A DNA stretch of 64,000 nucleotides from Macrostomum lignano (GCA_002269645.1 NIVC01000169.1:588097-652096); one strand, 5' to 3'. Counted from the stretch's first letter, positions 1,244-24,429 are shown. The notes: generated by a model not told the origin, from the letters alone. Translations and numbers: made by a program.

Positions 1244-4200
1244 CTCATTCATTGTGTCAGTTTGGCCTTTCTCGAATCTGCTTTTGTCCTCATCCCTCAG
1301 CTCGATGTCACACCTGCGACCGGCTTTGTCAAACAAAGACATGTAAATGGTAGAGTCGGTGCCCGCGAAATTCTTCTTGCCAGTCTTTGTTACAATTTGG
1401 TAAAGCGTTGTCTGGGTGTACACGGAGCCTGAAAGAGTAGAGTCAGGCAAGCGCACTTGTCCAGGTGTTGTCCACCTGCTTATCTCTCCTAGTCCAGGTG
1501 TTCTCCCACTCACCCACTCCATCGTGAACATCTTTGACAGTCCAAACCTCCCTCATTGGCGTCTCCTCATTAAGCCACTCGGAGACAGTAAAAAGCCATT
1601 TCTGACCAGTCTTGATGTCCTTCACTATCACCTGATCGACAAACCAGGTACGAGAACTTTCGCTCGATCTTAAAAATAAAAAAGTGAACAAGAGTTTGTT
1701 CCATATGCTTTCGTTACATATAAACTAGCAGTCAAGTGCCCAAGTACACAAATACTCAAGTACTCAAGTAACTCACGTACCCAAGTACTTAAGTAGTAAA
1801 GTACAAAAGTACTCACGTACCTAAGTACTCAAGTACTAAAGTACAAAAATACTCACGTACCCAAGTAATCAAGTACAAAAGTACAAAAGTACTTAAGTAC
1901 CTAAGTATTCAAGTACTAAAGTACAAAAGTACTCACGTACACAAGTAATCAAGTACAAAAGTACGAAAGTACTCACGTACCTAAGTATTCAAGTATTCAA
2001 GTACTTCAGTACTCACGCAAGTGTCAAGTTTAAAGCCTAACCTGTTCATCTTGTCCTTTTTATCGAACTTGTCCGACGATCGAGGATTGCGGGTGTCCAA
2101 TTCCAATCTGAAAATTTAACCGAAAAAATAAGTTAAAGGAATTGCTTTGAAAGACACCTAAAGTAAAGCTGAAGGATCATAAAGACACCGGAAGTATAAA
2201 GCCGATGGGTCATATATAAGACACCGGAAGTGTCTTTTTCTTACCTGATTCCCTTGAGATCGCCAAAGTCTTCGACGTACAATTCGAATACATCTTTGCT
2301 GCCGGGCTGAAAAATATTGCGGCCACCGTCACTACTGCCGCCCTCTTCGACAGGTCGCCGAAGTTCGTGACGACCTCGCGACCCTTTGGCGCCCATCAGG
2401 CTGATGTACACTCGACAGTCAGTGCCGGAAGTCGCCTTCCGGCCAGTGTAAGTCGTGACCAGAATGCCGCGCCCGGCTTGAGCCAAACTTTTAGCGCTGG
2501 TTGTAGGCGGGAGTCGAACCCGGTCCCTCCGACCAGATTTCAGCCAGTTGTTCACGTTGAAGTGGTACTCCATGCCCAGGCTGTAGTCTCTGACGCTCAC
2601 CTGCGGTTAATTAGGAGTTGGCAATGGGGCGCCTTGACAAACTAAATGCTTTAAAAACTCATATTTCACAAACTGCATATTTCACAAACTACACGATTCA
2701 CAAACTACACAATTCACAAGCTACACAATGCACAAACTACACAATTAACAAAGTGCATAGTTCACAAACTACACAATTCACAAACTGCATAGTTCACAAA
2801 CTACACAATTCACAAAATTTACCATTCACGAACTAAGAATTCACAAGCTAGACACTTCACAAAACAAACGCCTGAAATTATTGAAACTTTAAAATCAGAA
2901 ATATTCTACTAGTTTGTAAACCAGCTTCAAAAAACAATTTACTTACCGTCTCAATTAGCCAACGATATCGATGCTTCTTTGGCTTGACCTGATCTGCAGC
3001 TGGCAGTCTACTCGAAGCTGTAGCAGCCGCTGCCGTCGCTTCTTCAGGTGGCTCAATGGCAAGCGTCATGTCCGACAGGCGGCCGATCCGGGGCCCACGG
3101 ATGTGGAACACCTCCGTGCTGCCACTGTCGAAAAAGAATGCCAACGAGCCGAACTTTTTGGTGAGGCGGCTCCGGCTTAGAGTGTCATCTTCGCCGCGGA
3201 GGGTAATATAAACCTGAGGCAGAGGGGCGGTGGATGGGCAGAGAGGGGCGGCGATGGCTAGCGTACACTCGGCAGGGAAGGGTTAGAAAAGACACTGTAC
3301 AGTTGGAGACGAGATTTAAGACTGTACATTTGGAGACGAGATTTAAAAGACACTGTACATTTAGAGACGAGATTTAAAAGACAGTGTACATTTGGAGACG
3401 AGATTTAAAAGATACTGTACATTTAGAGACGAGATTCAAAAGATACTGTACATTTAGAGACTAGATCTAAAAAACAGACTGACTCACTGGAGCAGAGCAG
3501 GCAGCCTTAATATCCGTGCCAGTTTTCACCATGACCCTGTAGAGGCACTCTTTGCTCTCTGGTTTTGGCGGCGGCGGTTTCGGTGGCACGAACGGGGCCG
3601 GCGCTTCATAAGGAATTCGTTTCTTTCCGTGGATTTTCTTCTGCCGAATTAGGGTAACGTGATTGGACGTGCAGTGCCGAAAATTAGCTTTTCTTATCAT
3701 TCTTTTACCATAGCCCACAACTAGCTTGATGGGGCAGAGGAGTCACGCACCCCTGAAGCTTAAGGTGCCGCCACCTTGCAGTAGCGTCCTTGGTGCTAAA
3801 GCCCTTGGTGCTAAAGCCCCTGGTGCTACGAGTATTCTAACGTCCTGAAGCAGGCACATTCCTACTTTTTACCTGCCGTTAAAAAATGAAAAAACAATAA
3901 TGCAGAAATATGCTTTCTATCTTACCTCAGTTTTCATGATGTGTTTTTTATGCTGTTCCATTGTCGAGCAAAGATAACAGAATGGATTCTCTGAAAGGAA
4001 ATATTTGGAGTCAATTTTACTTCATTTGATTCAATATGGAAATATGAAATATGGTTGTAGATGTCATTCTTAACGATAGCTTTCGCCCCCTCTGTAGCTA
4101 CACCCCGTTAAATGAAAATAAAAAAGGCATGAAAATCCCCCAGTCACCCTCGTATCGGCGCGCCGGTAGGCCGTCCTCGTACTCGCCAGGCCTGGCCGGC

Positions 4201-4988
4201 GCGGTGAACAGGCGGCCGTTGCTGTCGGGCTCCATACGGGTGAACATCACCGCCAAGTTTCGCGGATCGGACGACTTGGCCAGCCGGTGGATTTCTCCGT
4301 CGGCTAAAATGTTTTATTTTGTTTTGAATGACACAAAATAAATATATTTTGATAATTGACACAAAAATTGAAAAAAATTATTATGTTTTGGCATAGCGAA
4401 TAATTTATAAAAAATTATAGATTACGAATTCATATGTATATCAATAATGTATTTGAGTCATCTTATCTGTCATTAGTAATATTTTCAATCTCAACCAAAA
4501 CAATAATTTAACTTTATGGAACATTAAACCATTATTGAAATTCATTTTGTATTGGACAGACTAAACTGTTATTTTTTAGAGCCAAAAATAAAAATTTAAT
4601 GTGAAGCTATATATCATCATTCACACCAGTTAAGTATAATTAATTAAGGATATGCAGAAACTTCTTATTTCTCCTAAGAAATAACCTTCTTTTGAGACAA
4701 ATTATAGATGATAACTAAATTTGTCAAGATGAGATTTAGGTTTATCAGTATTTGTGAAAGATTGAAAGCACCTGCAAATTCAATAAAAAATATACTACAT
4801 AGCAACAGGGGAGTTACCATTAGAAAGTACTCACTCTGAGATTGCTTAATAGTTTCGTCATATTCTTTCATCTTCTCAAGTTCGTCGACATGATCCTTCA
4901 GAAGGTCCAGATATAGCTGATTGTCTTTACAAAAATCCGTTAAATTATCTGAATATAACTGGACTTTACGCTGCCTACTAAGCTCCAT
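1244..4988 (-). CDS. Multi-exon PLAT/LH2-domain protein (LOXHD1/RP1-like architecture); 3' end not located
   Basis: Phase-consistent GT-AG exons: 4835-4988, 4148-4303, 3926-3990, (unresolved 3720-3870), 3488-~3718, 2947-3213, 2245-2600, 2042-2107, 1514-1668, 1244-1455. Three PLAT-like units: YRVMVKTG..A.VYITLRG...F..GSTEVF; VTTYTG...SGTDCRVYISLMG.KG...FQPGSKDVF; YQIVTKTG...AGTDSTIYMSLF...RFEKGQTD. The first two are followed by W(L/F)(I/V)(E/D).V.V strands. Confidence 0.8.
1750..2020. repeat. Intronic minisatellite (AAGTAC/AAGTACTCACGTAC units)
   Basis: Tandem degenerate repeats inside a PLAT-gene intron. Confidence 0.9.
2660..2860. repeat. Intronic minisatellite (CACAAACTACACAATT, ~16 bp)
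   Basis: Tandem repeat inside a PLAT-gene intron. Confidence 0.9.
3290..3470. repeat. Intronic minisatellite (GAGACGAGATTTAAAAGACACTGTACATTT, ~32 bp)
   Basis: About 6 tandem copies. Confidence 0.9.
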
Positions 4989-6329
4989 ACTGTGACAATG
5001 TTATTTTATAATTTTACAGAACTTAATAATTCATTTGACTATCAAATCGCGTACAGTGACAAATAGTGTAGGTAATAGCTACCGTAAAATTGGTGAATGT
5101 TTTAAAAGTTAAAACAGTGAATCAAACATTGATGTATTAGCAATGAACAAATACTTATCTGAATTAAATTTTTGTTCAAGTGAATTTCAGCTTTCAACAT
5201 GATTTGTTTAGTAAAAAATCTGTGATCAACCACAAGCAAATATATAACTGGTAACTTTTGTTAAAACTTATTTACCTGTCATGATTTTAGTGGCCCGGAC
5301 AACTCTTGATGAATGGATAGTCAAAACCTAGGAAAAATTGAATGAGTGTATATTTTATATATCAGAAGTAAGGACGTTTCTCGTCTACTAAAGTCTACCT
5401 AATAGATCGACCTAATCTTTATATTTTTACGTAGTTTTCCTTTCGGACTTCACAATATACATGTACACAGGTGCTGAAGTACAAAAGAACGCGACACAGA
5501 TAAAACTCCCATTCAGTGCTATGCGTAAAATCATCTTAGAAAATGGAAACAACTCGACTCATTGATTTTGAGAGCTCATTATATCATTCTGTTACCCATT
5601 TTTTACTAGTCATCAAGCTGAGAATGATAATATAGATTCATTTAAACCAATGAGATCACCTGTGCTATTTTTATGATTTATAGGCATGTGTTATACACTG
5701 TACATGTGCAATATTGTACGTAAATTTTTTATTATATAAACATAGAATTAGTATTTTCTATACGAAAAGCTTTATGACTATCAATATAGAGCTATAATAA
5801 AAAGTAAGTATATATAATATCAAAAGATAAACATTCATGGGTCTCTTGTATTAAAAGCAATTTTTGTGTTGAAAAAGAAAAGCCTTCTACTATCTCCGTA
5901 AATGCATTTATAGTCGTTTTCACGACAAACCTCAAAAAACAAACTACACGTACATAATGTATATGAATAGCATTAGGCATAGGCTATAAGACTCATGTAT
6001 ATTTATTAGATTCGCCATGTTTTGTCAGTCGGCCATTACGTAACTGCAAATAAATTTAAAACAACATTCTACAGTACATGTACATACATGAAAAATGTAT
6101 AAAAGTTTACACATCGATCAGTGCTTTCTCACTGAAATTGCCACCTGCTGCAAGTGTAAAAAAGTAAAACAAAATATAAAGAAAAATATAAAAAATAGAA
6201 ATTGGTACACAGTATAGGTAAAATTAGTGTAATAAAGGCTAGAAAAAAGTACACACAGTACTCCTCAATTTAAGTTCTGTATAAAAGCGCCTATGTACAT
6301 GCACATTGTATACAGAAGGTTCCAGAGCA

Positions 6330-7630
6330 TTAAGTCTTGGCCAGCTTCATCGGCCGGGGCACGTGACCGGCTGGCGGCTGTCTCGACTTCGGCCCCATCC
6401 GAGCGGGAACCATCGGCTGTGGCGGCGGCCGCGGCTTCGGTGGCGGCGGACGCGGCGGTGGCACCCGTTTCGGCTTCGCCTTGCCTTTCAGCTTGAACCT
6501 CAGCTCTGAAGATCGATGGGTTAATACAGAGGCAGCTGCAGTGGAGATTTCCTGATGCAGTATGACACTCGGTTGAGACTTAATTTATAACCTTTTGCAT
6601 ATTATTGGGGTATTATGAACCATTGTTATTGGGGTTGTAGCCAAGTGGTTTGATCGAGTGTCGGACTCACGACTGAAAGGTCGGCGGTTCGATTCTCGAC
6701 CCATTTGGAACAGTTTTAGCCCTTGAGCAAGACACTTAACTCAGCATAAATATTGCTCCAGTTCACCCAGCTGTAAAATGGGTGCCAGCATTAGCTGGGG
6801 TAATTAAGGGTGTGTGAGGGGACCCCCCCCCCAATCCTCCTTGGACTGAACAGCCGTACGCTGCCTTCAGATGCGCCGCGCAATAGCTGCGGCTGAGCTG
6901 TCGGTTGCACATCTGCCCGTTAGGACAGGTGTAAACAATTATTATTGGGGAAACAACAGGGTATTATTGGGTATCGGGGGAAACAACAGGGTATTATTGG
7001 GGTATCGGGGGGAAACAACAGGGTATTATTGGGGGTATCGAGGGAAACAGCAGGGTATTATTGGGGGTATCGAGGGAAACAGCAGGGTATTATTGGGGGT
7101 ATCGAGGGAAACAGCAGGGTATTATTGGGGGTATCGAGGGAAACAGCAGGGTATTATTGGGGGTATCGAGGGAAACAGCAGGGTATTATTGGGGGTATCG
7201 GGGGGAAACAGCAGGGTATTATTGGGGGTATCGAGAGAAACAGCAGGGTATTATTGGGGGTATCGGGGGGAAACAGCAGGGTATTATTGGGGGTATCGAG
7301 GGAAACAGCAGGGTATTATTGGGGGGTATCGAGGAAAACAGCAGGGTATTATTGGGGGGTATCGGGGAGAAACAGCAGGGTATTATTGGGGTATCGTGAG
7401 AAACAGCAGGGTATTATTGGGGGTAACAGGGTGAATTTTTCGAATCGATCTTTATAGCAAGCAAGGCAGAGCAGAAATGAGTTATTCAGTTAGAAAAATA
7501 TTTACAATCGGCACTCACTCGGTTTCGCAGTGACTTTCAGCAATCGCCTATGGCAAGCATCCGACTCTTCAGCGATGATTGACAGCAGGACAAGGCAGAA
7601 TAGCGGAAGAAGCTTTAATAGTAGACTCAT
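6330..7630 (-). CDS. Secreted cationic Pro/Lys/Arg-rich peptide, gene C (95 aa): MSLLLKLLPLFCLVLLSIIAEESDA-CHRRLLKVTAKPKLRFKLKGKAKPKRVPPPRPPPPKPRPPPQPMVPARMGPKSRQPPAGHVPRPMKLAKT
   Basis: Exon 1 is 7519-7630 (ATG, hydrophobic signal peptide, A|GTGAGT donor). Exon 2 is 6330-6505 (TTAAC...TCTTCAG acceptor, phase 1, TAA). An alternative acceptor near 6550 would give another frame. Confidence 0.65.
6631..6913 (+). mobile_element. tRNA-derived CORE-type SINE (full length)
   Basis: tRNA-like head with A box TAGCCAAGTGG and B box GGTTCGATTC. Central CCTTGAGCAAGACACTTAAC...CAGCTGTAAAATGGG resembles the CORE domain. A second near-identical copy lies at 29384-29578. Confidence 0.85.
6935..7430. repeat. 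Intronic minisatellite (GGGTATTATTGGGGGTATCGAGGGAAACAGCA, ~32 bp)
   Basis: About 15 tandem copies; source of the spurious ORFs at 6871-7457. Confidence 0.95.
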
Positions 7631-8269
7631 TGTGCCAATTAGTGATCTTTGATCTAGCTCGATCTTGTTCACAAGCATAAAATGTAGGAACCTTACTAGA
7701 TCTGTTTGCTGAAGCAGAAGAAATTTCTCAGCTTAAACCATAGACAGAAAAATTCTACAAAAAAAACTCGGATATTGCGTGCATTTCTACTAGCAAGTAG
7801 AGTAGTTAAAATTTACATCTTTTTTAACTTACCGTTGAAAAAAGTAGAAAATTAATCAATATTGCCAAATTGACATGAAGCCAATTGCATTAATAAAAAC
7901 TGACAAAAACCACATATTACAGACTCAAAGTGCCGCATCGGGTACTTTGTACTTTTGTTTACTTTTGCAAGCGTTACTGGGGTTCGCACACCATTGCTAC
8001 TTTTGTAGGGAAACTTAATGAAAAAAGCAGTTTACTACTTTGATACTTTAGAATAGGTTATATTCTCAATACAGTAGTATATCATGCATTTTAACTAACT
8101 TCGTCTTCTATCTTATTTGATATAGTAAAAAATTGAAACCTCAGCATTTACTGCCGGTTGGATATCAGAGGGTAGTGTCAGTCTGCTAGAGTGAGTAATT
8201 AACTTTGACAGTCTCTGATGATTGACAGGTCCACAGCACATTGGGTTGCCCCCTGATTGCTCAGCTGCA

Positions 8270-10680
8270 TTACGTTACAATGTGGAGACTGTCCTGAGCT
8301 GTAAGAGTTATTTTAGGTCAGTGAATAATGCGAAGTTCCAACAAAATGGTTGCCGTGCAGTCAGTGGGGTGTCAGTGAGGTGTCAGTGCAGTCAGTAGGG
8401 TGTCAGTGCAGTCAGTGGGGTGTCAGTGGGGTGTCAGTGAAGTCAGTAGGGTGTCAGTGCAGTCAGTGGGGTGTCAGTGAAGTCAGTAGGGTGTCAGTGC
8501 AGTCAGTGCAGTCAGTGGGGTGTCAGTGCAGTCAGTAGGGTGTCAGTGCAGTCAGTGCAGTCAGTGCAGTCAGTGAGGTGTCAGTGCAGTCAGTGCAGTC
8601 AGTAGGGTGTCAGTGCAGTCAGTGGGGTGTCAGTGCAGTCAGTAGGGTGTCAGTGCGGTCAGTAGGGTGTCAGTGCGGTCAGCAGCAGAAGCACTCACAG
8701 GTTTTAAATGCTTTTGAAGAAGCTTTGTTTGCATCATCACGGGCCTTCGAAGCTGTAATGATTTTATTTTCCGAGTTTTTACTTTTACGATGCAGTTTAG
8801 TATGCAATAAAGACAAACTGTATGCGATAGACTCTAATGAAAAAAAATTTACCATCTTTAAAAGTTTTCATTGCTTTGGCACTGCCCACATTCTGGAGGT
8901 TCTTCGCCTTTTGAGCTGAAATTTTGGTAGGCAAAGGTGAGCTGTGTTACCCGAGCAGTTTGTCAGGTAAGTGGTGTGTCAGGTGAGTGGTGTGTCAGGT
9001 GAGTGGTGTGTCAGGTGAGCGGTGTGTCAGGTGAGCGGTGTGTCAGGTGAGTGGTGTGTCAGGTGAGTGGTGTGTCAGGTGAGTGGTGTGTCAGGTGAGT
9101 GGTGTGTCAGGTGAGTGGTGTGTCAGGGGATTTGTGTGCCGGTTCTAGTTTTTGAGGAATCAAGTCTTGAAATCGCAAATAGCCCCAGCTGTCTCACTTT
9201 TTTTGAAGGCCTTGGCTTTAGCGGCGTTCTCAGCCAACCGGGCTTTGTGGGCTGCAGGAAAACAAAATTAAGGGTGTCGGTGCAATTAGTGAAGATGTCA
9301 GGCGGATTAAGTAGGGTGTCGCTAAAACTAGTTAGGATTTTGAACTAGAGTTAGACACGTTTTCTCAAGATATGCAAAAGAAATTACCTTTATTGAAATT
9401 TTTCATAACTTTATGGCTGCCCAAATTATTTGTACGAGGCGCTGAAAAATAAAAATACTGGTTCACTAAGTTTAAAGATAGCTTTGAAATATTGATAGAA
9501 GTAGAATGATTTTATGGTAGAAAAGCCAGTAGGGAGTGACACCCAGGACGCATTCAAATAACACAGTAATCAGTGGAGTGACACAGGAGTCAATGGAGTG
9601 ACACAGGAGTCAATGGAGTGACATAGTAATCAGTGGAGTGACACAGGAGTCAATGGAGTGACATAGTAATCAGTGGAGTGACACATGAATCAGTGGAGTG
9701 ACACAGGAGTCAATGGAGTGACATAGTAATCAGTGGAGTGACACAATAATCAGTGGAGTGACACAGGAGTCAGTGGAGTGACATAGTAATCAGTGGAGTG
9801 ACACATGAATCAGTGGAGTGACACAAGAGTCAGTGGAGTGACACAGGAGTCAATGGAGTGACATAGTAATCAGTGGAGTGACACATGAATCAGTGGAGTG
9901 ACACAGGAGTCAGTGGAGTGACACAGGAGTCAATGGAGTGACATAGTAATCAGTGGAGTGACACAATAATCAGTGGAGTGACACAGGAGTCAATGAAGTG
10001 ACACAGGAGTCAGTGGAGTGACACAGGAGTCAATGGAGTGACATAGTAATCAGTGGAGTGACACAATAATCAGTGGAGTGACACAGGAGTCAGTGGAGTG
10101 ACATAGTAATCAGTGGAGTGACACAACAATCAGTGGAGTGACACAGGAGTCAGTGGAGTGACATAGTAATCAGTGGAGTGACACATGAATCAGTGGAGTG
10201 ACACAAGAGTCAGTGGAGTGACACAGGAGTCAATGGAGTGACATAGTAATCAGTGGAGTGACACATGAATCAGTGGAGTGACACAGGAGTCAGTGGAGTG
10301 ACACAGGAGTCAATGGAGTGACATAGTAATCAGTGGAGTGACACAGGAGTCAGTACAGTGACACAGTAATCAGTGGAGTGACACAGGAGCCAGTGGCCGG
10401 GGTGACACAGGAGCCAGTGGCCGGGGTGACACAGGAGCCAGTGGCCGGGGTGACACAGGAGCCAGTGGAGTGACACAAGAGTCAGTAGAGTAACACAGGA
10501 GTCAGTGGAGTGACACAAGAGTCTGTGGAGTGACAGAGCAGTGTACTGAACCAGCAGCAACTTACCTTGCTTAAATCGCTTTAATCCTTTCGGGCAGGCA
10601 GACGTCAGAGTGGCATCTTCCATGAGCAGGATGAGCACAACAGTTGACAGTATAGAGATGCATCCTGTTTTGTGCAACAT
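8270..10680 (-). CDS. Secreted cationic Lys/Ala-rich peptide, gene B (~104 aa): MLHKTGCISILSTVVLILLMEDATLTSA-CPKGLKRFKQAHKARLAENAAKAKAFKKTQKAKNLQNVGSAKAMKTFKDASKARDDANKASSKAFKT(SQDSLHIVT)
   Basis: Exons 10566-10680, 9198-9251 (54 nt), 8853-8915 (63 nt), 8699-8752 (54 nt), tentative 8270-8298. All junctions are phase 1 with canonical GT/AG, and the internal exons are multiples of 3 with no stops. Confidence 0.75.
8355..8685. repeat. Intronic minisatellite (CAGTG/GTCAGTGGGGT units)
   Basis: Tandem repeat in a gene B intron. Confidence 0.9.
8965..9126. repeat. Intronic minisatellite (GTGTGTCAGGTGAGTG, 16 bp)
   Basis: About 10 copies in a gene B intron. Confidence 0.95.
9560..10540. repeat. Intronic minisatellite (CAGTGGAGTGACACAGGAGT, 20 bp)
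   Basis: About 48 copies with higher-order variants, in gene B intron 1. Confidence 0.95.
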
Positions 10681-11048
10681 TTTCGCAAGTCAACTTCAAC
10701 TATATTGAATTTCAACTGACCTTTCTGGTTTATCAAATTCGGTTTCTTGCGCAACAGATCGATAATATTTAAGAGTCGAAAGCGATTTAAAAAGTAATTC
10801 CGTACTTTCACCCTGCATATATTGCGAGCATGTGCTTGGACATAAAATAGAATACTAATAAATAAAGGTTTGCAGCTTCTGCAGCGGCTATTTGTCTATG
10901 TGTGAAAGTACGGCATTCTGAGCTTCTTGTGATGCTGGTGCTTGTCTATGGCTAGGACCAAAAAAATCGAGCTTCTGGCGATCCTGTTATGTTATTCATC
11001 CATGGTCAAAACCTAAAGTGCCATAGACAAAATCATGGTGGAGACTTT

Positions 11049-12652
11049 CGGTTAACAGTAGAAAGACCATGGGGGTGTATTTCAAATACACACATTTTTC
11101 TTTTGTCTGGATCTCCGAGAATATTCAACCAATTGCCATCAAAATCCAGAACACGGGCTAAAATTTTCCGCTCTATTCGACGAAGCAACTCTGAGAATCA
11201 CGAAAAATCGGCATCGTTGAGATATTCAACGATTCTCCTCGGGGTGTCCGGTGGCAAAAACCACCAACATTGGCAAATTTTTTCTGTTCACAAAATCTCA
11301 TCTTGAAACCACGTCGGCTCAGGAAGCTATGCATATTAGTCGTAAAGGCCTTTCTTCTCAGCATCCCAGGAACCAGGGTCCCCTTCATCACTGTCTGGAG
11401 CATCGGCGGCGACCGTCAGGACCTTCAAAAAAAGCATCCGATCGGCATCGCAGAGACGGCTGCGTTCCCAAAACTGAAATGGAAGAATCCTCTTCTGCAT
11501 TCAGCGTTCAGTCAGCAGACATAATCGGTGAATGAAATGGACGACGGCGACCCTCTAGGTTGACCTGTAGACATACAAGCGACCTTCGGGACCTTCAACG
11601 GAGTGCCACCATGCGGCCCCGACTAGCTGGCATCCCCAACATCGTGAATTTTCTGTCAAGGCACCAAACCAGGCATGTCTGCATGTTATACAGTGGTCCT
11701 GCACCATGTTCAGCATTCAGCTCTGTCTGGACGACCTCCGGCACCTTCAACGGAATGCCACCACGCGGCCCCGACTAGCTGGCATCCCCAACATCGTGAA
11801 TTTTCTGTCAAGGCACCAAACCAGGCATGTCTGCATATTACACAGTGGTCCTGCACCATGTTCAGCATTCAGCTCTGTCTGGACGACCTCCGGCACCTTC
11901 AACGGAATGCCACCACGCGACCCTGACGAGCGAACACTCCCAACATCGTAATCTGTAACTCTCCAATTTAACATGGTGGAAAAGCATTGTATAATATGCA
12001 AACATGCCTGGTTTGGTGCCTTGATAGAAAGAGCAGGATGTTGGCGTTGGCGGTGTCAGCTCATCGGGGCCGCGTGGTGGCACTCCGTTGAAGGTCCCGA
12101 AGGTCGCCTGTGTGTCTACAGGTCAGCCTAGAGGGTCGCCATCATCCATTTCATTCACCGATTATGTCTGCTGACTGAATGTTGCATGCAGAAGAGGATT
12201 CTTCCGTTTCAGTTTTGGAAACGCAGCCGTCTCTGCGATGCCGATCGGATGCTTTTGTTGAAGGTCCTGACGGTCGCCGCCGATGCTCCAGACGGTGATG
12301 AAGGGGACCCTGGTTCCTGGGATGCTGAGAAGAAAGGCCTCTCCGACAGATGGACCCAGATTATTGAGCCAATATAGATTCACCATAAAGGTTTATACAG
12401 TGTAGTGTTGGTTGTCCTTGCCACCAGTGTCTTCGACAAGAATCGTTGAATATCTCGACGATGCTGACGTCGGATGACTTTGAAAGTTAATTCGTTGGAA
12501 AGGGGGGGGAAATTTTGATCCAAATGGTGGACTTTTACGAAAATTGGTTATTCGGTTTGCGAGCTATGGTGAAATTGGTTGTGTGTATTTGTAATACACC
12601 CCCATGGTCTTTCCCCATGGGGAAAATAGCGTGGTCTTTCTACTGTTAACCG
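11049..12652. mobile_element. Foldback/long-TIR non-autonomous element (~1.6 kb)
   Basis: Starts CGGTTAACAGTAGAAAGACC and ends GGTCTTTCTACTGTTAACCG. Segment 11345-11630 is the reverse complement of 12050-12345 at high identity. Internal ~140-bp tandem duplication at 11590-11940. No clear TSD. Confidence 0.75.
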
Positions 12653-13299
12653 CATAGGTTTATTGCTTTAACTACTTTTAAAATTTTAAAATCTGGATTG
12701 GAAAGAATGCTAGAGAACTAACTAACTACCTAACTAAAGAGCTTTTTTGATGAGTTGCCCTTATATAATCCTCAGAGATATTTAACTCTTGTAAGAGGTA
12801 AGTACTTGAAGACTTGAATTACTTGAGGTAAACACGTATTGTTAAATCACATCACCAGAGGTAAACTACTTGCAGTAATATTATAAACAATAATTGAACT
12901 CGAAAATAAGAAGAAACAAAATCATTTTAAAGTTTGTAAGTGTTATCTGATTATACTCATCTGTGCAAAGTATATTTGTTATACAAAGAAAAAGCCTAAA
13001 AAGTTTAAAAAAAGTTTTCTATTGCTATGTAAATCTGTGAAAAAAACTTGGCTTATGTACACTGCACTGCATGTTTAACAAGGACCACAGATACAAGAAG
13101 AGCTATAGATATTCACTCGCAAAAAAGAGGTCGTCTACACGGTCCACTCTTTTCAGTAGATATTTGCGTTTGTGCCTAAAATAAATTGTCTTACCGACTC
13201 CAGACTGCCAGGCATAAGCGAGTAAGAGAAAAGGCTGATAAGACAGTTTGACTTTCCCCTTGCCCGCTTGCGGCCGACTTTGACCTCTTCTCCTTACTG

Positions 13300-13455
13300 C
13301 TCTCTCATTGGCTGAGCTAGATTGGGCCTGCCGTAGACTGAATTTCGTCCGTTTATCTTTGACCTCTCTCATTGGCTGAGCCAGATTGGGCCTGCCCTAG
13401 ACTGAATTTCGTCCGTTTATCTTTGACCTCTCTCATTGGCTGAGCCAGATGGGGC
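13300..13455. repeat. ~64-bp tandem repeat (x2.5) rich in ATTGG (CCAAT) boxes
   Basis: CTCTCTCATTGGCTGAGCCAGATTGGGCCTGCC...CTTTGAC repeated. Confidence 0.75.
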
Positions 13456-13924
13456 CCTCCCGCTGCTGCCCGCTCGAGTGTACATCGAGTTAAATGCTTG
13501 CTATTCATTCTTAACCCTATAAGCTTAATGAGGCCGCAAACCCAGAGGAAGGAAAAAAATTAAGCGCCACAATATATTTAAAAGACACTGCGCAAACAAA
13601 CTACTGACAAAGAGTAGACGCTCTACTTTTTTCACAAGTTTATTTGGGATTGATACAAGTATATCTAGTAATTCTAGCGTCTGTGATTATGACCAACTGC
13701 CTATTTGTATACACAATATTTCTGTAAAATTAATACTGTAACCCGCTTAATACTGTAGGTTTTTGCGACCAAATAAATATTTGAACTGCAGAAGGTCTGT
13801 TTATCTTAGCTGTGCTGTAGTGTACAACAACGTGGCGGTAGAAAGATACTATTCATTATTTGCTGACAAACTGTTGACGCAGTGAAAAGTAGCGAGTGAT
13901 GTCAGCTAGGACTCAGTTGATTCT

Positions 13925-16259
13925 CTAAGCGCCAACTGCAAGTTTTTACGGGGAAAATTTATTAGGTGAGAACGTGAATTTTCCTGATTTTCAGAACTAT
14001 TTTTACATTAGGTGTGTCAGGATTCAGGACTAGTTTCTAAAATGTGTCAGGACTAGTTACTCAAATGTGTCAGGACTAGTTTATAAAACTTGTCAGGACT
14101 AGTTTCTGAAATGTGTCAGGACTAGTTACTCAAATGTGTCAGGACTAGTTTATAAAACGTGTCAGGACTAGTTTATAAAACTTGTCAGGACTAGTTTCTG
14201 AAATGTGTCAGGACTAGTTACTCAAATGTGTCAGGACTAGTTTATAAAACTTGTCAGGACTAGTTTCTGAAATGTGTCAGGACTAGTTACTCAAATGTGT
14301 CAGGACTAGTTTATAAAACGTGTCAGGACTAGTTTATAAAACTTGTCAGGACTAGTTTCTGAAATGTGTCAGGACTAGTTACTCAAACGTGTCAGGACTA
14401 GTTTATAAAACTTGTCAGGACTAGTTTCTGAAATGTGTCAGGACTAGTTACTCAAACGTGTCAGGACTAGTTTATAAAACGTGTCAGGACTAGTTTATAA
14501 AACTTGTCAGGACTAGTTTCTGAAATGTGTCAGGACTAGTTACTCAAATGTGTCAGGACTAGTTTATAAAACTTGTCAGGACTAGTTACTCAAACGTGTC
14601 AGGACTAGTTTATAAAACGTGTCAGGACTAGTTTATAAAACTTGTCAGGACTAGTTTCTGAAATGTGTCAGGACTAGTTACTCAAATGTGTCAGGACTAG
14701 TTTATAAAACTTGTCAGGACTAGTTTCTGAAATGTGTCAGGACTAGTTACTCAAATGTGTCAGGACTAGTTTATAAAACGTGTCAGGACTAGTTTCTGAA
14801 ATGTGTCAGGACTAGTTACTCAAACGTGTCAGGACTAGTTTATAAAACGTGTCAGGACTAGTTTATAAAACGTGTCAGGACTAGTTTCTGAAATGTGTCA
14901 GGACTAGTTTATAAAACGTGTCAGGACTAGTTTCTGAAATGTGTCAGGACTAGTTACTCAAACGTGTCAGGACTAGTTTATAAAACGTGTCAGGACTAGT
15001 TTATAAAACGTGTCAGGACTAGTTTCTGAAATGTGTCAGGACTAGTTTATAAAACGTGTCAGGACTAGTTTATAAAACGTGTCAGGACTAGTTTATAAAA
15101 CGTCAGGACTAGTTTATAAAACGTGTCAGGACTAGTTTATAAAATGTGTCAACTCATCACAATTTTCTAATCGAGCCCACTTACCTTTAACGGAGCCAGC
15201 AGAAGGAACTGGAATTATGATGATGTTTGGGATTAATTAATTAATAAATTGTTGGGATAGCATGCATTTCGGAATGCAGTAAGTTAAAATTCACTCATAA
15301 GTCACTCACCCCCAGAGCTGAGAATTTTTGCGCTAGGAGCCTTTTGGGTTCTCCCTGAGGCCTTTGCCGCGGCTCTTCCAAACTTGGATTGGTGCAGTTT
15401 TGTCATCTCGGATTTTTCGACTGAAGAAATAATTATGAGCATTGAGGGGCTTTGAGATAGAATCTGAGATAATCTACGAAAATATTTCAAAAAGTGGGTG
15501 TCAGATAGATTGGGTGTCAGACAGATTAAGTGTCAGATAGATTGGGTGTCAGATAGATTGGGTGTCAGACAGATTGGGTGTCAGACAAATTAAGTGTCAG
15601 ATAGATTGGATGTCAGACAGATTGGGTGTCAGACAGATTACATGTATATATCAGAATGTTGGCTCAATGTTGGAAATTTTAGCTCATTGTAATACGTGAA
15701 GGATCATAACAGTGAAAACATGAGTATAATGATAAAATTGATATACTTACAATTTTTAAATTTTCTAAAAGCCTTGTTACCCTTCAGGACGCTTCTTTTG
15801 TAAACTGAAAAAATTGTAAGAGGATAATTTTTTTAGTATAGCATTGAAAAGAAATTTGAAGGCGCTGTGTACAGTACATGTAGGTGTCTTTCCGGTGGGT
15901 CTCGGAAGACATTGAGGTGTCTGTGGCGTGTCTCGGAAGACATTGACGTGTCTGTGGTGTGTCTCGGAAGACATTGACGTGTCTATTTGAGGTGTCTCAG
16001 AAGACATTTAGGTGTCTTTGTGGGGTGTCTCAGAAAACATTTTTAGGTGTCTATGTGGGGTGTCTTAGAAGAAATTGAGGTGTCTGTGTGGGGGTGTCTC
16101 AGAGTATTATTGAAAGGCAAAGCAACGCCACAGGTGAGATAACTTACGATTTTTGACGCCTCTCAGAGCCGCCCTGCAGGCGGAGCCGTTCTCTGTCCAG
16201 CACAGAAGCAGAAACAGGCAAACGAGTAGCAGCAGTTTCGAAAAAACGCATAACGACAT
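13925..16259 (-). CDS. Secreted cationic peptide, gene A (~85 aa): MSLCVFSKLLLLVCLFLLLCWTENGSA-CRAALRGVKNLEKSEMTKLHQSKFGRAAAKASGRTQKAPSAKILSSGVPSAGSVK(VGA)
   Basis: Exons 16148-16259 (C|GTAAGT), 15310-15420 (G|GTGAGT), 24-nt micro-exon 15185-15208 (G|GTAAGT), tentative last exon 13925-13935. All junctions are phase 1. Confidence 0.7.
14010..15150. repeat. Intronic minisatellite (GTGTCAGGACTAGTTTATAAAAC, ~23 bp)
   Basis: About 48 copies in a gene A intron. Confidence 0.95.
15495..15640. repeat. Intronic minisatellite (GGGTGTCAGATAGATT, 17 bp)
   Basis: About 8 copies in gene A intron 1. Confidence 0.9.
15880..16100. repeat. Intronic minisatellite (GTGTCTCGGAAGACATTGAGGTGTCTGTG-like)
   Basis: Degenerate tandem copies in gene A intron 1. 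Confidence 0.85.
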
Positions 16260-17106
16260 TTTTGGGCTTGAAGCCGCGACCTTAAACACTGACTTCAGCA
16301 CTTCAGCACTTCACTTTTCAACTTGCCATAATCCGTTATTTTTTCTATATTCAGAATAAATCTTTTTCAAAGGGCCGCGAGCTGGGCCATAGACGAAAAA
16401 GTAAAACAATTGAGCGTTGAAATCTTGGAAGTGTTCGATGCGCGTCACAAAACATAGGCAAGCGGCGTGCATTTTAATAAAAGTACATCATTATATTTTT
16501 AACAACAAAACTAACATAGACTGAAATAGTTCAATAAAAGCGGAAATAGCTATTAGAAACTTATAATATTCGAGCACCTGAGTTTGAAAAAAGACGATAT
16601 GTATTGAAAAATACTTTGTAAGCCAGGGCAGCTGCTGCAAAAAATGACACAAAAGCGACTGCTTTCCAAAGCCGATATGTATAGAAAATTACTACTTCAA
16701 GGAAGGAAGCTGCAAAATTTAGAAATAAACAAATATATAAAATACTATAGAACACCGCCTAAGAAGCCGTGCACACGTGTATTTAAGACAAATACACCGA
16801 AAGTATGTAATTACTATAAAAGTACATTTTACAGAATAGCACATTTATTGTAAAAGTACACTCCAAGAAAGTTAGCACAATACGGGACATTTTGTAGAAA
16901 AGTACATACATTATAGAAAAGTACACTTTCACTAAAGGTACATTTCGTAAAATAGTGCATTTTATAGAAAAGTACATTTCTTTGAAAAGTTAAATGTATA
17001 TAAAAGTACATTTATTCAAAATTAAACCTAACGTAAAAGTACATTTCGTAAAAAAGTTTTTTTAAAAGTACACTTTAAAAAAAGTACATTTCGTAAAAAG
17101 TTAAAT

Positions 17107-17785
17107 TTAGCCAGCGCCAGACAGCGCAGCGGGCAGCAGTTTGGCGCCATTGATTCCGTGAACGGACACTCGACCCGGACGCACCATGAGGCCGTGCTGC
17201 TGCTGACAGGTGAAGTACCTCTTGCCGAGGACTCGGCCGTCGTTTCGACCCAGCGGTTTTCGTAGTTCAACGCCCAGCCAAACACCGTCGGCAAAGTGCA
17301 CCCGGCCGATGAAGCGGACGGTGCCCATCAGGTTGCCGCAGAGCACCTGAAGAGATAGATTAGCAATCCATTTTATTTTATTAGCATCTGAGCGATAGAT
17401 TAGCAATCCATTCTACTCTATTAGGTTAAGAGATATAGACTAGGAATCTATTTTATTTTATTATATTTGGAGCGATAGATTAACAATCCATTATATCTTA
17501 TTAGGTTCGGAGATATAGATTAGCAATCCATTCTATTTTGTTAGGTTCGGAGCGATAGATTAGCAATCCATTATATCTTATTAGGTTCGGAGATATAGAT
17601 TAGCAATCCATTCTATTTTGTTAGGTTCGGAGCGATAGATTAGCAATCCATTATATCTTATTAGGTTCGGAGATAGATTAGCAATCCAATTACACATTCA
17701 TGCATTACATACTGCAGTCACCATACCTGTAATCCTTCGCGCAGAACAAGTGTTGCTTGTTGTTGTTGCTGCTGCTGTTGCTGCT

Positions 17786-17816
<31 letters not shown>

Positions 17817-20800
17817 TTGAGTGGCCGTGGCCTCTGCCTGCCTACCGGCGCACCTGTGCAGCCTGGCGGCAGACGCGAACACTCCGTGACCCTGCGGACA
17901 GTGGAAGTACCTTCGCCCCTCCACGGATCCGTCATTTCTGCCCACCGCGTTGTCCAGCTCCACCCCGTACCAAACTCCCGGGGCGAAGTGGCACTCGCCA
18001 ACGAACCGGACGGTGCCTCGACGTTGGCCGGCTACGATCACTCGGTCGCCGAGGGCGAAACTGTGCCGGGTTCGAACCCGGGCCTCCACGCCGCTGACGT
18101 CGATTGCGCCGCGATGGACCCGGGTGAAGCCGGACACGCGGCTCATGGGGACCAGTACCTGGCCGGGTTGGACACGGGGTCGGACACTTAATTCCTGGAC
18201 TCTTGATTCCTGATAACTAATTCTCGGACACCATTCCTGAACACTTCATTCCCGGACTCTCCTTTCCTGGACACTTCATTCTTAGGCACTCCATTTTTAA
18301 ACACTTCATTCCCGGACACTCCATTCCCGGACACTTCATTCCCAGACACTTCATTCCCGGACTCTCCATTCCTTCGGACATTTAATTCCCAGACACTTCA
18401 TTCCCGGACTCTCCATTCCTTCGGACATTTAATTCCCGGACACTTCATTCCCGGACACTTCATTCCTGGACACTTCATTCCCGGACCCTCCATTCCTCCG
18501 GACACTTCATTCCTGGAAATTTAATTCCCGGACTCTCCATTCCTCCGGACACTTCATTCCTGGAAATTTAATTCCCGGACTCTCCATTCCTCCGGACACT
18601 TCATTCCTGGAAATTTAATTCCTGGACATTTAATTCCCGGATACTTCATTCCCAGACACTTCATTCCCGGACTCTCCATTCCTCCGGACACTTCATTCCT
18701 GGAAATTTAATTCCCGGACATTTAATTCCCGGTTACTTCATTCCCGGACACTTCATTCACGGAAATTTATTTCCCGGACATTTAATTCCCGGACCCTCCA
18801 TTCCTCCGTTCACTTCATTCCCAGACACTTCATTCCCGGACTCTCCATTCCTCCGGACAATTCATTCCTGGAAATTTAATTCCCGGACATTTAATTCCCG
18901 GACACTTCATTCCCGGACACTTCATTCCCGGACACTTCATTCCTAGACACTTTATCTTCAGACCCTCCATTCCCGGACACTCACCCCCCGGCCAGCCGGA
19001 CACTGGAAGTATCTGACTCCGGACACGCAACCGTCGTGTCGGCCAGCCTGCGGCGTCTCGAGTTCAACTCCGGCCCAGACGCCTGGCGCGAATTCCACGG
19101 GGCCCCAGTAGCGGAGGGTGCCGGGCCGGGACCCAGCAACCAGGACTCGGTCGCCCAAGTTGGAAGGCGGCTGATCTGCTTGCTGCTGCGGTTTCTGCTG
19201 CGGCTGCCGCTGTGACTGCTGCTTCTGCTTCTGCAGTGCAGCTGCCTGATGTGTGATCAGAAGCGATAATTAGGATGATTCTTAGGGGATAATTGGGAAG
19301 ATTCTTAGGAAATAATTAGGAAGATTCTTAGGGGATAATTAGGAAGATTCTTAGACGATGAGTAGGGAGACTCTTAGAGGATAATTGGGGGTAGAATCTT
19401 AGGGGATAACAAGGGGATAACTAGAGAGATTCTTATACATCCAACTAAACGTGCTTCCCAGTGAAAGAAGAGGAGTGAAAGGCAAAGGCAAGGGAAGTCC
19501 AACCTCTTCAAACGCTGACGAAGCCACCGAAGCGGTTGATGAAGCGGACGACAGCGGAGCTGCAGCCGCGGCAGCCGGCACCGAAGCGGTGGACGAAGCG
19601 GACAGCCGAGGCGGTCGCTCAGGCCGACTGCCAGCCAGTAAAGTGAGCAGTCTCGATCGGATCTCTCGATTCTCAGCCGAAGAGTTTGAGTTGAACAAAC
19701 CAGAGGTCAGTTGAGGCAGGCAGTCGACGGGACGCCGGAGCAGCTCGTCTGTGGCTGCCAGAGCTGCCTGACCTGCGCTGGAGACCAGCAGGCGGGCGCT
19801 GCCTTCGCTCAGGTGTGCAGCGGCCAGGTGCAGCGGGGTGGCGTCTTCGAACTCGGTGCATCTGATTGTGAAAGAGGGCATGAATTGTTAAAGAGTCGGT
19901 TCTGAGTTCGAACTCTATTATGACCGTTTACTATGAGTTTGTTTGTACTTTAGTCTATGACCGGTTTCTATGAGTATGTTTGTACTTTAGTCTATGACCG
20001 GTTTCAATGAGCGTTTGTACTTTAGTCTATGACCGGTTTCTATGAGTATGTTTGTACTTTAGTCTATGACCGGTTTCTATGAGCGTTTGTACTTTAGTCT
20101 ATGACCGGTTTTTATGAGCATGTTTGTACTTTAGTCTATGACCGGTTTCTATGAGCGTTTGTACTTTAGTCTATGACCGGTTTCTGAGTTTGTACTTTAC
20201 TTTTCTGAGTTTGCACTTTAGTCTATGACCGGTTTCTATGAGTATGTTTGTACTTTAGTCTATGACCGGTTTCTGAGTTTGTACTTTAGTCTATGACCGG
20301 TTTCTATGAGTGCGTTTGTACTTTAGTCTATGACCGGTTTCTATGAGTGCGTTTGTACTTTAGTCTATGACCGGTTTCTATGAGTGCGTTTGTACTTTAG
20401 TCTATGACCGGTTTCTATGAGTGCGTTTGTACTTTAGTCTATGACCGGTTTCTATGAGTACGTTTGTACTTTAGTCTATGACCGGTTCTATGAGCATGTT
20501 TGTACTTTAGTCTATGACCGGTTTCTGAGTTTGTACTTTAGTCTATGACCGGTTTCTATGAGTGCGTTTGTACTTTAGTCTATGACCGGTTTCTATGAGT
20601 ATGTTTGTACTTTAGTCTATGACCGGTTTCTATGAGTATGTTTGTACTTTAGTCTATGACCGGTTTACTATGAGTTTGATTGTACTTAGTCTATGAAAGG
20701 TTTCTATGAGTTTGTTTGTACTTTAGTCTATGGCTGGTTTTTGAGTTTGTACTTTAGTCTATGGCTGGTTTCTGAGTTTGTACTTTAGTCTATGGCTGGT

Positions 20801-23048: not shown

Positions 23049-23163
23049 CAAGACAGGCTGCTTCTTGAACAGACAAGCTCCTAAATCAAGAAAGCGAGAG
23101 AAAAACACAAGCAAAAGCAAAGCAAGCAAACCTAACAAACCAGCAGACATTGTACAAGCGACA

Positions 23164-23961: not shown

Positions 23962-24429
23962 GAATTGCTCCAAGAATTGTTTTGTTTGTTTTCAAGATTG
24001 GTTAAACTTTTGACACGGTTTCTTGTACATCATTCACTTTCAGGCAGTACTAATTGTTAGCTCTTTAGGCCTGAGTACACTTAATGCGGCTTACTCAAGT
24101 TAAGCGTACAACTCATTAATTATAGTTTACACGAATTGACATTCGTTTATCTTTTGACTTTTTCATCATTTAAACAATTTTTTGAACTTTTTTAACTAGG
24201 AAAAAAGTGGTAGCACACATCCTCTTTCTGCATGCTACATGCTGTAATTTTACGTTAGGGAAAACACCATTACAATAGAAAAGGTGATTGAGCAAAACTT
24301 TGTCACATAGAACAAACATAGACATAGTCAAACGATGGAGCAATAGGCTTGTACTTTTACCATAGATAATGTGTCGGAAAAGTTTTTTATCTGAAGGGCC
24401 AGATATAGACTTTAGCGCATAGCTTTGGG

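What the first reader, a model, noticed from the sequence alone, without database searches (positions are those of the whole stretch)
6330..16259. Hidden tandem cluster of three secreted, Cys-initiated, highly cationic peptide genes (candidate new host-defence or secretory peptide family)
Seen in sequence: three co-oriented genes split into short exons, so the ORF track largely misses them. Each exon 1 (112, 115 and 112 nt) encodes a 25-28 aa hydrophobic signal ending (S/D)A, then a single Cys and a basic stretch (SA-CRAALRGVK, SA-CPKGLKRFK, DA-CHRRLLKVT), and ends at a phase-1 donor. The predicted mature peptides are 58-76 aa with roughly +10, +15 and +21 net charge. Established: signal peptide plus cationic amphipathic or Pro/Arg-rich mature region is the layout of antimicrobial peptides. 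Inference: this is a rapidly diverging paralog family (antimicrobial, adhesive/mucus or seminal peptides) in which only the signal exon architecture and the +1 Cys are conserved. The lone N-terminal Cys could mediate dimerisation or acylation.
Basis: partly seen in the sequence, partly recalled or inferred. Interest (0 to 1): 0.85.

Follow-up and report, generated by a model that had tools for sequence, protein, structure and literature searches.

The report
Three small secreted cationic flatworm genes
Three neighbouring genes of the flatworm Macrostomum lignano, one already in GenBank as a hypothetical protein and two unannotated, encode small, very basic proteins that are probably secreted; they have no relatives elsewhere and their function is untested.

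Summary
The window is Macrostomum lignano contig NIVC01000169.1. On the minus strand between 16259 and 6330 lie three co-oriented genes. Their first exons are 112, 115 and 112 nt. Each encodes a signal-peptide-like stretch, then one Cys and a basic stretch, and ends at a phase-1 GT donor. A generic filter for such first exons finds exactly these three in 64 kb.

The middle gene, spliced by hand, is 100% identical to GenBank PAA62608.1 (BOX15_Mlig016063g1, 122 aa). That annotation is transcript-based. Two UniProt models reuse my exon boundaries: an exon-skipping isoform, and a chimera ending in gene 3's last exon. Genes 1 and 3 are in no protein database searched.

Gene 2 consists of four duplicated ~18-residue Lys/Ala modules, each on a symmetric phase-1 exon, and is predicted helical. 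Gene 3 is 29% proline.

There are no homologues outside M. lignano, no Pfam family and no PDB relative. The UniRef label "60S ribosomal protein L29" is unsupported.

"Secreted polycation family" is supported. "Antimicrobial" is untested, and gene 2 is poorly amphipathic. This is an orphan family of moderate interest.

The parts
16148..16259 (-). g1 exon 1 (112 nt): ATG, signal-peptide-like 27 aa, Cys28, RAALRGVKN, phase-1 GTAAGT donor
   Evidence: intact in homeologous copy L001 with one A27T change
15751..15804 (-). g1 exon 2 (54 nt, phase 1-1): LYKRSVLKGNKAFRKFKN, the most amphipathic module; contains an XBBXBX motif (FRKFKN)
15310..15420 (-). g1 exon 3 (111 nt, phase 1-1)
   Evidence: third genomic copy L003 has 5 nt changes (3 replacement, 2 silent) with the frame kept
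15185..15208 (-). g1 exon 4 (24 nt, phase 1-1)
   Evidence: splice sites conserved in L001 and L003
13925..13935 (-). g1 terminal coding exon (VGA-stop). This is the least certain junction, because the 1.25-kb intron before it contains repeated cryptic acceptors. AATAAA lies at 13644-13639.
   Evidence: my reading
10566..10680 (-). g2 exon 1 (115 nt): signal-peptide-like 28 aa, Cys29, PKGLKRFKQ (XBBXBX motif LKRFKQ)
9388..9441 (-). g2 exon 2 (54 nt module, phase 1-1)
9198..9251 (-). g2 exon 3 (54 nt module, phase 1-1); also used in UniProt models P0003 and P0004
8853..8915 (-). g2 exon 4 (63 nt module, phase 1-1)
8699..8752 (-). g2 exon 5 (54 nt module, phase 1-1)
8270..8298 (-). g2 terminal coding exon (SQDSLHIVT-stop). 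No AATAAA within 650 nt downstream; the first ATTAAA lies inside g3 exon 1.
7519..7630 (-). g3 exon 1 (112 nt): signal-peptide-like 25 aa, Cys26, HRRLLKVTAKP, phase-1 GTGAGT donor
   Evidence: identical in L001 and L003
6330..6505 (-). g3 exon 2 (176 nt): Lys-rich start, then a Pro/Arg/Lys-rich tail, then stop. It is also the terminal exon of UniProt model A0A1I8I613. AATAAA lies at 6007-6002.
13936..15184 (-). g1 intron 4, mostly a 23-bp tandem array (14024-15151). It is given as an example: about 68% of all g1-g3 intron bases are tandem arrays.
   Evidence: with exon coordinates

Best explanation
This is a lineage-restricted tandem cluster of three real protein-coding genes of Macrostomum lignano. 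Each gene makes a small pre-protein. A cleavable N-terminal signal peptide sends it into the secretory pathway. Cleavage after (S/D)A would leave a mature polypeptide that starts with its only cysteine and is extremely basic (pI 10.7-12, net charge +17 to +21).

The coding parts are built from short symmetric phase-1 exons. In g2, four of these are duplicates of one ~18-residue Lys/Ala module, about five helical turns each, and together they are predicted to form long helices. g3 instead carries a proline-rich, non-helical Lys/Arg tail. Because every intron is in phase 1, exons can be skipped or joined across genes without breaking the frame, and such models are on record.

Inferred mechanism: the proteins act outside the cell as soluble polycations. 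They would bind polyanionic targets electrostatically, such as microbial envelopes, glycocalyx or mucus glycans, or the contents of secretory granules. They probably act as disulfide-linked dimers through the unpaired N-terminal Cys. A protective or antimicrobial surface role is the single most likely function, but it is only a plurality guess (about 0.3). They are not ribosomal protein L29.

Shown: gene structures, the transcript-derived status of g2, composition, module duplication, and absence of homologues. Inferred: secretion, cleavage site, dimerisation, targets.
For: - Identity of the window and exact match of spliced g2 to PAA62608.1/PAA88972.1.
- The GenBank annotation derives from RNA-seq and transcriptome models plus TransDecoder (PMC5730564).
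- Canonical GT-AG sites and uniform phase 1.
- Only three such first exons in 64 kb.
- The open reading frames of g3 and g2, and of g1 where covered, are intact in two other genomic copies.
- UniProt models P0003 (e1+e3+e6) and P0004 (g2 e1+e3 + g3 e2) reuse my exon boundaries.
- Hydrophobic cores of 13-15 residues, small residues at -3/-1, one Cys, and charge and pI values.
- g2 modules are similar beyond composition (shuffle p<=0.0015, z 4.3-6.5).
- AlphaFold2 single-sequence models: g2 helices 45-83 and 87-121 with local pLDDT up to ~90; the g3 tail has no secondary structure.
- XBBXBX heparin-binding-type motifs lie at or near the N-terminus of g2 and in g1.
- No Pfam, PDB or database relatives.
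Against: - There is no transcript or protein evidence for g1, or for g3 exon 1.
- The exact sequences of g1, g3 and ten guessed isoforms are absent from the 15-billion-protein collection.
- The homeologous copies are too similar (exons 0.9% vs flanks ~1% divergent) to show purifying selection.
- Pairwise similarity of g3 to g1 and g2 is not significant.
- SignalP could not be run.
- g2 is hydrophilic with a low hydrophobic moment, which does not fit a membrane-active peptide.
- No expression site is known. Gene id Mlig016063 was not found in the full text of the library or in the supplements of seven M. lignano papers.
Confidence: 0.6

Rival explanations
1. The cluster is one complex locus rather than three genes. 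The three signal-peptide exons are alternative first exons or promoters. The phase-1 cassettes and the terminal exons (g2 exon 6, g3 exon 2, g1 exon 5) are mixed by exon skipping and read-through splicing. On this reading, 'gene 3' is partly an alternative 3' end of g2.
For: - UniProt A0A1I8I613 (P0004) joins g2 exons 1 and 3 to g3 exon 2 in frame. A0A1I8GNM7 (P0003) skips g2 exons 2, 4 and 5.
- All introns are in phase 1.
- g2 has no AATAAA before g3 begins.
- M. lignano is known to make multi-gene precursor transcripts (PMC5730564).
Against: - Each unit has its own ATG and signal exon and its own stop. g1 and g3 have AATAAA about 300 nt after the stop.
- The transcript-based GenBank model ends g2 at its own exon 6.
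- P0003 and P0004 may be ab initio predictions from the older ML2 assembly. Their provenance could not be checked because the paper is not held.
- Other guessed chimeras are not on record.
Confidence: 0.15
2. The proteins are secreted polycations, but their role is reproductive or adhesive/structural rather than host defence. Candidates are seminal-fluid or prostate products, cement or adhesive gland cohesive components, or counter-ions that condense mucus or rhabdite granules.
For: - Flatworm temporary adhesives rely on secreted Lys/Arg-rich proteins whose positive charge is functionally essential (PMC9229212).
- Planarians have a taxon-restricted family of Lys-rich signal-peptide proteins (PROG-1-like) in differentiating epidermis (PMC5750089).
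- The rapid divergence of the paralogues is typical of reproductive proteins.
- g2 is not amphipathic.
Against: - The known adhesive proteins are giant multidomain proteins, not 8-10 kDa peptides.
- The sequences and ids were not found in the held supplements of the seminal-fluid in situ hybridisation screen or of the RNA-seq study of three Macrostomum species, PMC7336406. That is weak evidence, because those papers mostly use other transcript names.
Confidence: 0.3
3. g1 and/or g3 are not functional protein-coding genes. They would be decaying duplicates of g2's first exon followed by fortuitously open sequence, or non-coding transcripts.
For: - Neither is annotated in a transcript-based annotation.
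- No database protein matches either.
- The replacement:silent ratio is 3:2 in the one divergent exon seen.
- There is no significant similarity of g3 to the others.
Against: - Five of five (g1) and two of two (g3) exons keep strong splice sites and one frame.
- The frames are intact in all genomic copies examined.
- g3 exon 2 is used in a deposited model.
- A 95-aa ORF falls under TransDecoder's usual 100-aa floor (my knowledge), and a 103-aa low-complexity ORF is borderline. This explains the omission without invoking pseudogenes.
- Poly(A) signals lie at plausible distances.
Confidence: 0.12
4. They are prohormone or neuropeptide precursors that are cut at basic sites into short signalling peptides.
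For: - A signal peptide is followed by a basic-residue-rich precursor.
- There are two dibasic sites per protein, and a ...SKFGR site in g1 that could give an amidated end (and my reading).
Against: - Only two dibasic sites occur per protein, and they do not flank repeated conserved peptides.
- The repeated unit of g2 is a helix module without flanking cleavage sites or Gly amidation donors.
- There is no resemblance to flatworm FLP/NPF motifs (my knowledge).
Confidence: 0.05
5. g2 is a divergent 60S ribosomal protein L29, as UniRef names it.
For: All deposited copies carry the UniRef label, and the composition is Lys/Ala-rich.
Against: - There is no hit to Pfam Ribosomal_L29e even at E<=10.
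- No eL29 chain appears among PDB hits at E<=10, although ribosome structures abound there.
- An N-terminal signal peptide is incompatible with a cytosolic ribosomal protein.
Confidence: 0.02

Closest known systems
Taxon-restricted secreted cationic peptide families of invertebrates (e.g. Hydra arminins; clustered nlp/cnc genes of C. elegans) - from my knowledge
   Same: They are orphan genes found as tandem paralogues. Each has a signal peptide followed by a highly cationic mature region, diverges rapidly, and has no recognisable domain.
   Different: No sequence relationship is detectable. Arminins have an anionic pro-region and a ~30-aa active peptide. Here the whole 70-94-aa chain is basic, starts with a Cys, and is built from phase-1 exon modules. 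Activity is untested.
Proline/arginine-rich antimicrobial peptides (PR-39, Bac5/Bac7, apidaecin type) - from my knowledge
   Same: The g3 mature part is 29% Pro and 30% Lys+Arg, with PRP/PPRP-type runs and no predicted secondary structure.
   Different: g3 has no cathelin or other known pro-domain, no sequence similarity to any PDB chain, is Lys-rich rather than Arg-rich, is 70 aa long, and has an N-terminal Cys. The resemblance is compositional only.
Planarian PROG-1-like lysine-rich proteins (PMC5750089)
   Same: Both are flatworm-restricted, have a signal peptide, are Lys-rich (10-19% in PROG; 17-21% here), lack a conserved domain, and diverge quickly between paralogues.
   Different: PROG-1 homologues share several conserved Cys and Asp positions. 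These proteins have a single Cys and almost no Asp. No hit to any planarian protein was found in a 1.84-billion-protein search. The expression site here is unknown.
Lys/Arg-rich flatworm adhesive/cohesive proteins (Mlig-ap1 GRK repeats, Tmed-ap2/ap3; PMC9229212)
   Same: They are secreted proteins of the same animal group, function through positive charge, and have a repetitive modular build.
   Different: Those are proteins of 3,700-14,800 aa with known domains. These are 8-10 kDa with none.
60S ribosomal protein L29 (eL29), the UniRef label
   Same: Only the small size and Lys/Ala richness.
   Different: There is no Pfam, PDB or BLASTP similarity, and a signal peptide is present.

Membership tests
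eL29 / Ribosomal_L29e (PF01779) | Match to the conserved N-terminal L29e domain | tested here: not met
   No PF01779 hit at E<=10 for any of the three proteins. No eL29 chain among PDB hits at E<=10. No BLASTP alignment to human RPL29, recalled from memory.
eL29 / Ribosomal_L29e (PF01779) | Cytosolic protein without a signal peptide | tested here: not met
   The N-terminal hydrophobic core has KD(11)=3.0, followed by a -3/-1 small-residue site.
Linear cationic alpha-helical antimicrobial peptides (cecropin/moricin-like) | Secretory signal peptide and net positive charge | tested here: met
   Rule-based signal peptides; net charge +17, +19 and +21. SignalP was not available.
Linear cationic alpha-helical antimicrobial peptides (cecropin/moricin-like) | Amphipathic helix with a clear hydrophobic face (high hydrophobic moment, roughly 40-50% hydrophobic residues) | tested here: inconclusive
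   g1 exon 2 has muH 0.58 (126 of 5000 shuffles reach it). The g2 modules have muH 0.03-0.42, and only 18-22% of residues are strongly hydrophobic. Helices are predicted for g2.
Linear cationic alpha-helical antimicrobial peptides (cecropin/moricin-like) | Microbicidal activity of the mature peptide | not testable with these tools
   Needs synthesis and MIC assays.
Proline-rich antimicrobial peptides | Pro >=25% with interspersed basic residues (PRP-type motifs) | tested here: met
   The g3 mature part has 20 Pro in 70 aa (29%) and 21 Lys+Arg, with runs such as PPPRPPPPKPRPPP and VPRP. This is compositional only.
Proline-rich antimicrobial peptides | Homology to a known precursor family (e.g. 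a cathelin pro-domain) or to known PrAMP sequences | tested here: not met
   No Pfam domain. The only PDB hit is Cas11a at E=0.19. No hit in the 5.8-billion-protein search.
Planarian PROG-1-like lysine-rich proteins | Several conserved Cys and Asp positions shared by family members | tested here: not met
   There is one Cys per mature protein, and 0-5 acidic residues (D+E) per mature protein. The family description comes from PMC5750089. No direct alignment was made because no PROG sequence was in hand.
Hedgehog/Spitz-type N-terminally acylated secreted proteins (analogy for the +1 Cys) | Cys as the first residue after signal-peptide cleavage, followed by basic residues | tested here: inconclusive
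   The -3/-1 rule places cleavage before the Cys in all three. Alternatives exist: after S27 in g2, A20 in g3 and C28 in g1 (my reading). Basic stretches follow.
Hedgehog/Spitz-type N-terminally acylated secreted proteins (analogy for the +1 Cys) | Acylation by an HHAT-type acyltransferase | not testable with these tools
   Needs mass spectrometry of the native protein.
Neuropeptide/prohormone precursors | Repeated or conserved peptides flanked by dibasic cleavage sites, often with a Gly amidation donor | tested here: not met
   There are two dibasic sites per protein, and they do not flank the repeated modules.

The most novel reading that the evidence does not exclude
The cluster is a combinatorial peptide locus. 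It would comprise three signal-peptide/Cys first exons, a pool of symmetric phase-1 cassette exons, and alternative terminal exons. Exon skipping and inter-genic splicing, as in the deposited models P0003 and P0004, would mix these into a repertoire of secreted polycationic peptides of different length and tail chemistry (helical Lys/Ala or Pro/Arg-rich). This would be the first antimicrobial-type effector family described in a free-living flatworm, possibly dimerised or lipidated through the N-terminal Cys.
Probability: 0.1. Interest if true: 0.6.

Novelty: new member of a known kind. Interest (0 to 1): 0.35.

Why it matters
M. lignano is a transgenic flatworm model, yet I found no antimicrobial or small cationic effector family described for it. 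The locus shows that its transcript-based annotation misses open reading frames near 100 aa (g1 is 103 aa, g3 is 95 aa). It also shows that one member carries a misleading "ribosomal protein L29" label in UniRef. If expression and activity were confirmed, the cluster would give a compact case of gene birth and diversification through phase-1 exon modules. The model organism allows it to be knocked down or tagged. Without such data it remains one of many orphan secreted-protein loci in this genome.

Tried and rejected
- **Selection test.** I compared exons with flanks in the two other genomic copies (L001, L003). The copies are 97-100% identical in exons and introns alike, so the test has no power.
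- **Database searches.** g1 and g3 against 5.8 billion proteins gave nothing. g2 by phmmer against 1.84 billion representatives gave only its own isoform model. Exact look-up of g1, g3, an allelic g1 and nine guessed isoforms or chimeras found none on record.
- **Family and structure libraries.** Pfam gave only sub-threshold noise: Uteroglobin, NOP5NT and PRIMA1. PDB sequence searches gave noise: Sen34, Cas11a and RFC1.
- **RPL29 label.** Rejected.
- **Expression data.** Gene id Mlig016063 is absent from the full text of the library and from the held supplements of seven M. lignano papers.
- **Provenance of the older UniProt models.** The 2015 genome paper is not held.
- **DNA alignment of the three promoters and first exons.** No convincing conservation.
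- **More paralogues or cassette exons in the window.** None found.
- **tRNA and Rfam scans.** Nothing.
- **Shared GTGTCAG core of the intronic tandem arrays as a cluster-specific feature.** Rejected as cluster-specific, because the same core occurs in an intron of the neighbouring Ank/CAP-Gly gene.

Full report
**Origin of the window.** The hand-spliced middle gene retrieved a single 100%-identical, 100%-coverage protein, [quoted passage not shown]. Its encoding contigs are in assembly GCA_002269645.1. Locus L002 (NIVC01000169.1) is 100% identical to window 1-20000, so the window is that contig. L001 (NIVC01001916.1) and L003 (NIVC01001895.1) are two further genomic copies of the same region, as expected for this hidden polyploid (PMC5730564).

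**The observation.** All three genes lie on the minus strand.
- Exon 1 of g1 is 16259-16148, of g2 10680-10566, and of g3 7630-7519. The lengths are 112, 115 and 112 nt.
- Following the strongest acceptors and donors gives complete frames. g1 has five coding exons and 103 aa. g2 has six and 122 aa. g3 has two and 95 aa. Every intron is GT-AG and in phase 1.
- A generic filter for signal-peptide-like first exons with a phase-1 GTRAG donor returns exactly these three in the whole window, both strands. A scan for further symmetric Lys/Arg-rich cassette exons finds only the ones already used.

The anatomy is therefore real and not a chance pattern. Two corrections are needed. The mature lengths are 76, 94 and 70 aa with net charge +17, +19 and +21. 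And g2 is not hidden from public annotation.

**Independent support.**
- The GenBank annotation of this assembly was made from genome-guided and de novo transcript assemblies. Gene ends were set by trans-splicing and poly(A) reads, and coding potential was judged by TransDecoder (PMC5730564). The exact agreement of my g2 with PAA62608.1/PAA88972.1 means all five g2 junctions have RNA-derived support.
- A full HMMER scan of 1.84 billion representative proteins with g2 found one further entry. P0003 (UniProt A0A1I8GNM7, 65 aa) equals g2 exons 1+3+6. Its cluster mate P0004 (A0A1I8I613, 114 aa) equals g2 exons 1+3 followed by g3 exon 2.
- Both models reuse my exon boundaries, including the acceptor at 6505. 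They show that exon skipping and cross-gene joining stay in frame because all introns share phase 1. Their provenance is probably the older ML2 gene set (my knowledge), but this could not be checked.
- g1 and g3 as such are in no database, and no gene is called there in the record.
- A 95-aa ORF is below TransDecoder's usual 100-aa floor and a 103-aa one is borderline (my knowledge). That is a sufficient reason for the omission.
- Their frames and splice sites are intact in the other genomic copies. Those copies are too similar overall (exons 7/803 differences, flanks about 1%) to test for selection.
- g1 and g3 have AATAAA 281 and 323 nt after their stops. g2 has none before g3 starts, which fits occasional read-through into g3.

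**The proteins.**
- Each begins with a charged n-region, a 13-15-residue hydrophobic core (maximal Kyte-Doolittle 11-residue mean 3.0-3.6) and a polar c-region. The c-region ends G-S-A, T-S-A or S-D-A, directly before the only Cys.
- This fits the -3/-1 rule for signal peptidase, and the core is too short for a membrane anchor. This is inference, because SignalP was unavailable.
- The mature parts have pI 10.7-12.
- The four internal exons of g2 (54, 54, 63 and 54 nt) encode mutually similar modules of the type A-x-K-A-R-...-K-A-F-K-K. Their similarity exceeds composition (z 4.3-6.5, shuffle p<=0.0015), so they arose by exon duplication.
- AlphaFold2 without an alignment predicts two long helices, residues 45-83 and 87-121. 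Local pLDDT reaches about 90, but pTM is only 0.26.
- The g3 tail is 29% Pro and is predicted without secondary structure.
- g1 and g2 align weakly over signal peptide plus exon 2 (E=0.004). g3 aligns with neither. Paralogy of g3 therefore rests on position, orientation, first-exon length and phase, and the Cys.

**What it is not.**
- There is no Pfam family, no solved-structure relative, no transposon signature and no Rfam or tRNA feature.
- The UniRef name "60S ribosomal protein L29" has no support. A signal peptide is also present.

**Mechanism.**
- Shown: small, probably secreted polycations with one unpaired Cys at the predicted N-terminus, Cardin-Weintraub-type XBBXBX motifs (LKRFKQ in g2, FRKFKN in g1), a helical Lys/Ala body or a Pro-rich tail, and a modular exon build.
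- Inferred: they bind polyanionic surfaces electrostatically, probably as disulfide dimers.
- The antimicrobial reading is plausible for g1, whose exon 2 has a hydrophobic moment of 0.58, in the top 2.5% of shuffles. It is also plausible for g3, whose composition resembles proline-rich antimicrobial peptides.
- It is weak for g2, which is hydrophilic and nearly non-amphipathic (module moments 0.03-0.42).
- Flatworm biology offers equally good alternatives. Positive charge is the working principle of flatworm adhesive and cohesive proteins (PMC9229212). Planarians have a taxon-restricted family of Lys-rich signal-peptide proteins in differentiating epidermis (PMC5750089). Neither family is related in sequence or architecture.
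- No expression data could be found. The gene id is absent from the searchable literature and from the supplements of seven papers. No antimicrobial peptide family of Macrostomum turned up.

**Verdict.** It is a genuine, lineage-restricted tandem family of small secretory polycations, with one member already deposited as a hypothetical protein and two unannotated. Host defence is one of several untested roles. Novelty is modest: a new member of the known kind "orphan secreted cationic peptide genes". Interest is 0.35.

Noticed in passing
window 8355-8682, 8961-9138, 14024-15151, 15495-15639, 21148-21270: Five different tandem arrays (periods 16-23 bp) in introns of g1, g2 and the neighbouring Ank/CAP-Gly gene share the core GTGTCAG. 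It is always on the + strand, so the sense strand of these minus-strand genes carries CTGACAC, which contains a branch-point-like CTGAC. There are 87 copies against 8.3 expected. About 68% of g1-g3 intron sequence is tandem array.
   Followed up: partly
window 11160-12515: A foldback/inverted-repeat element lies between g1 and g2. Its arms are 11304-11640 and 12046-12382 (337 nt, 90% complementary), with an internal 152-bp tandem duplication. It is probably a non-autonomous transposon.
   Followed up: partly
window 6640-6720 (g3 intron): A stretch resembles a tRNA-derived SINE head (…GGTTCGATTCTCGACC…). ARAGORN and Rfam report nothing.
   Followed up: partly
window 23146-34303 vs 36388-39992: A large inverted segmental duplication (94-98% identity) carries two HSP20/alpha-crystallin genes (23065-23961 +, 36132-36917 -). 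It also carries paired small Cys-rich signal-peptide ORFs (33936-34295 -, 37737-38135 +) and 28- and 30-bp tandem arrays in opposite orientation. The 30-bp array is 2.3 kb in one arm and 0.34 kb in the other.
   Followed up: partly
window 8270-7630: g2 has no AATAAA between its stop and the start of g3. The first ATTAAA lies inside g3 exon 1. This fits the deposited g2-g3 chimeric model A0A1I8I613.
   Followed up: partly
window 50973-60851 (+): An MTR4/SKIV2L2-like RNA helicase gene (DEAD, MTR4 beta-barrel and DSHCT domains) has introns almost entirely filled by long tandem arrays. These create spurious ORFs of up to 1126 aa.
   Followed up: partly
window 1205-2600 (-), 17107-21660 (-): The flanking genes are a PLAT/LH2-repeat gene downstream and an ankyrin + CAP-Gly gene upstream, the latter with a poly-Gln tract at about 17750-17820. 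The same order is seen in the homeologous loci L001 and L003.
   Followed up: yes
window 29064-29402, 39303-39593, 40500-40811, 41331-41612: Several short ORFs contain WSxW / CSC-type motifs reminiscent of thrombospondin type-1 repeats. They are probably exons of an unexamined gene or genes. The one ORF scanned (41331-41612) had no Pfam hit at E<=0.001.
   Followed up: no
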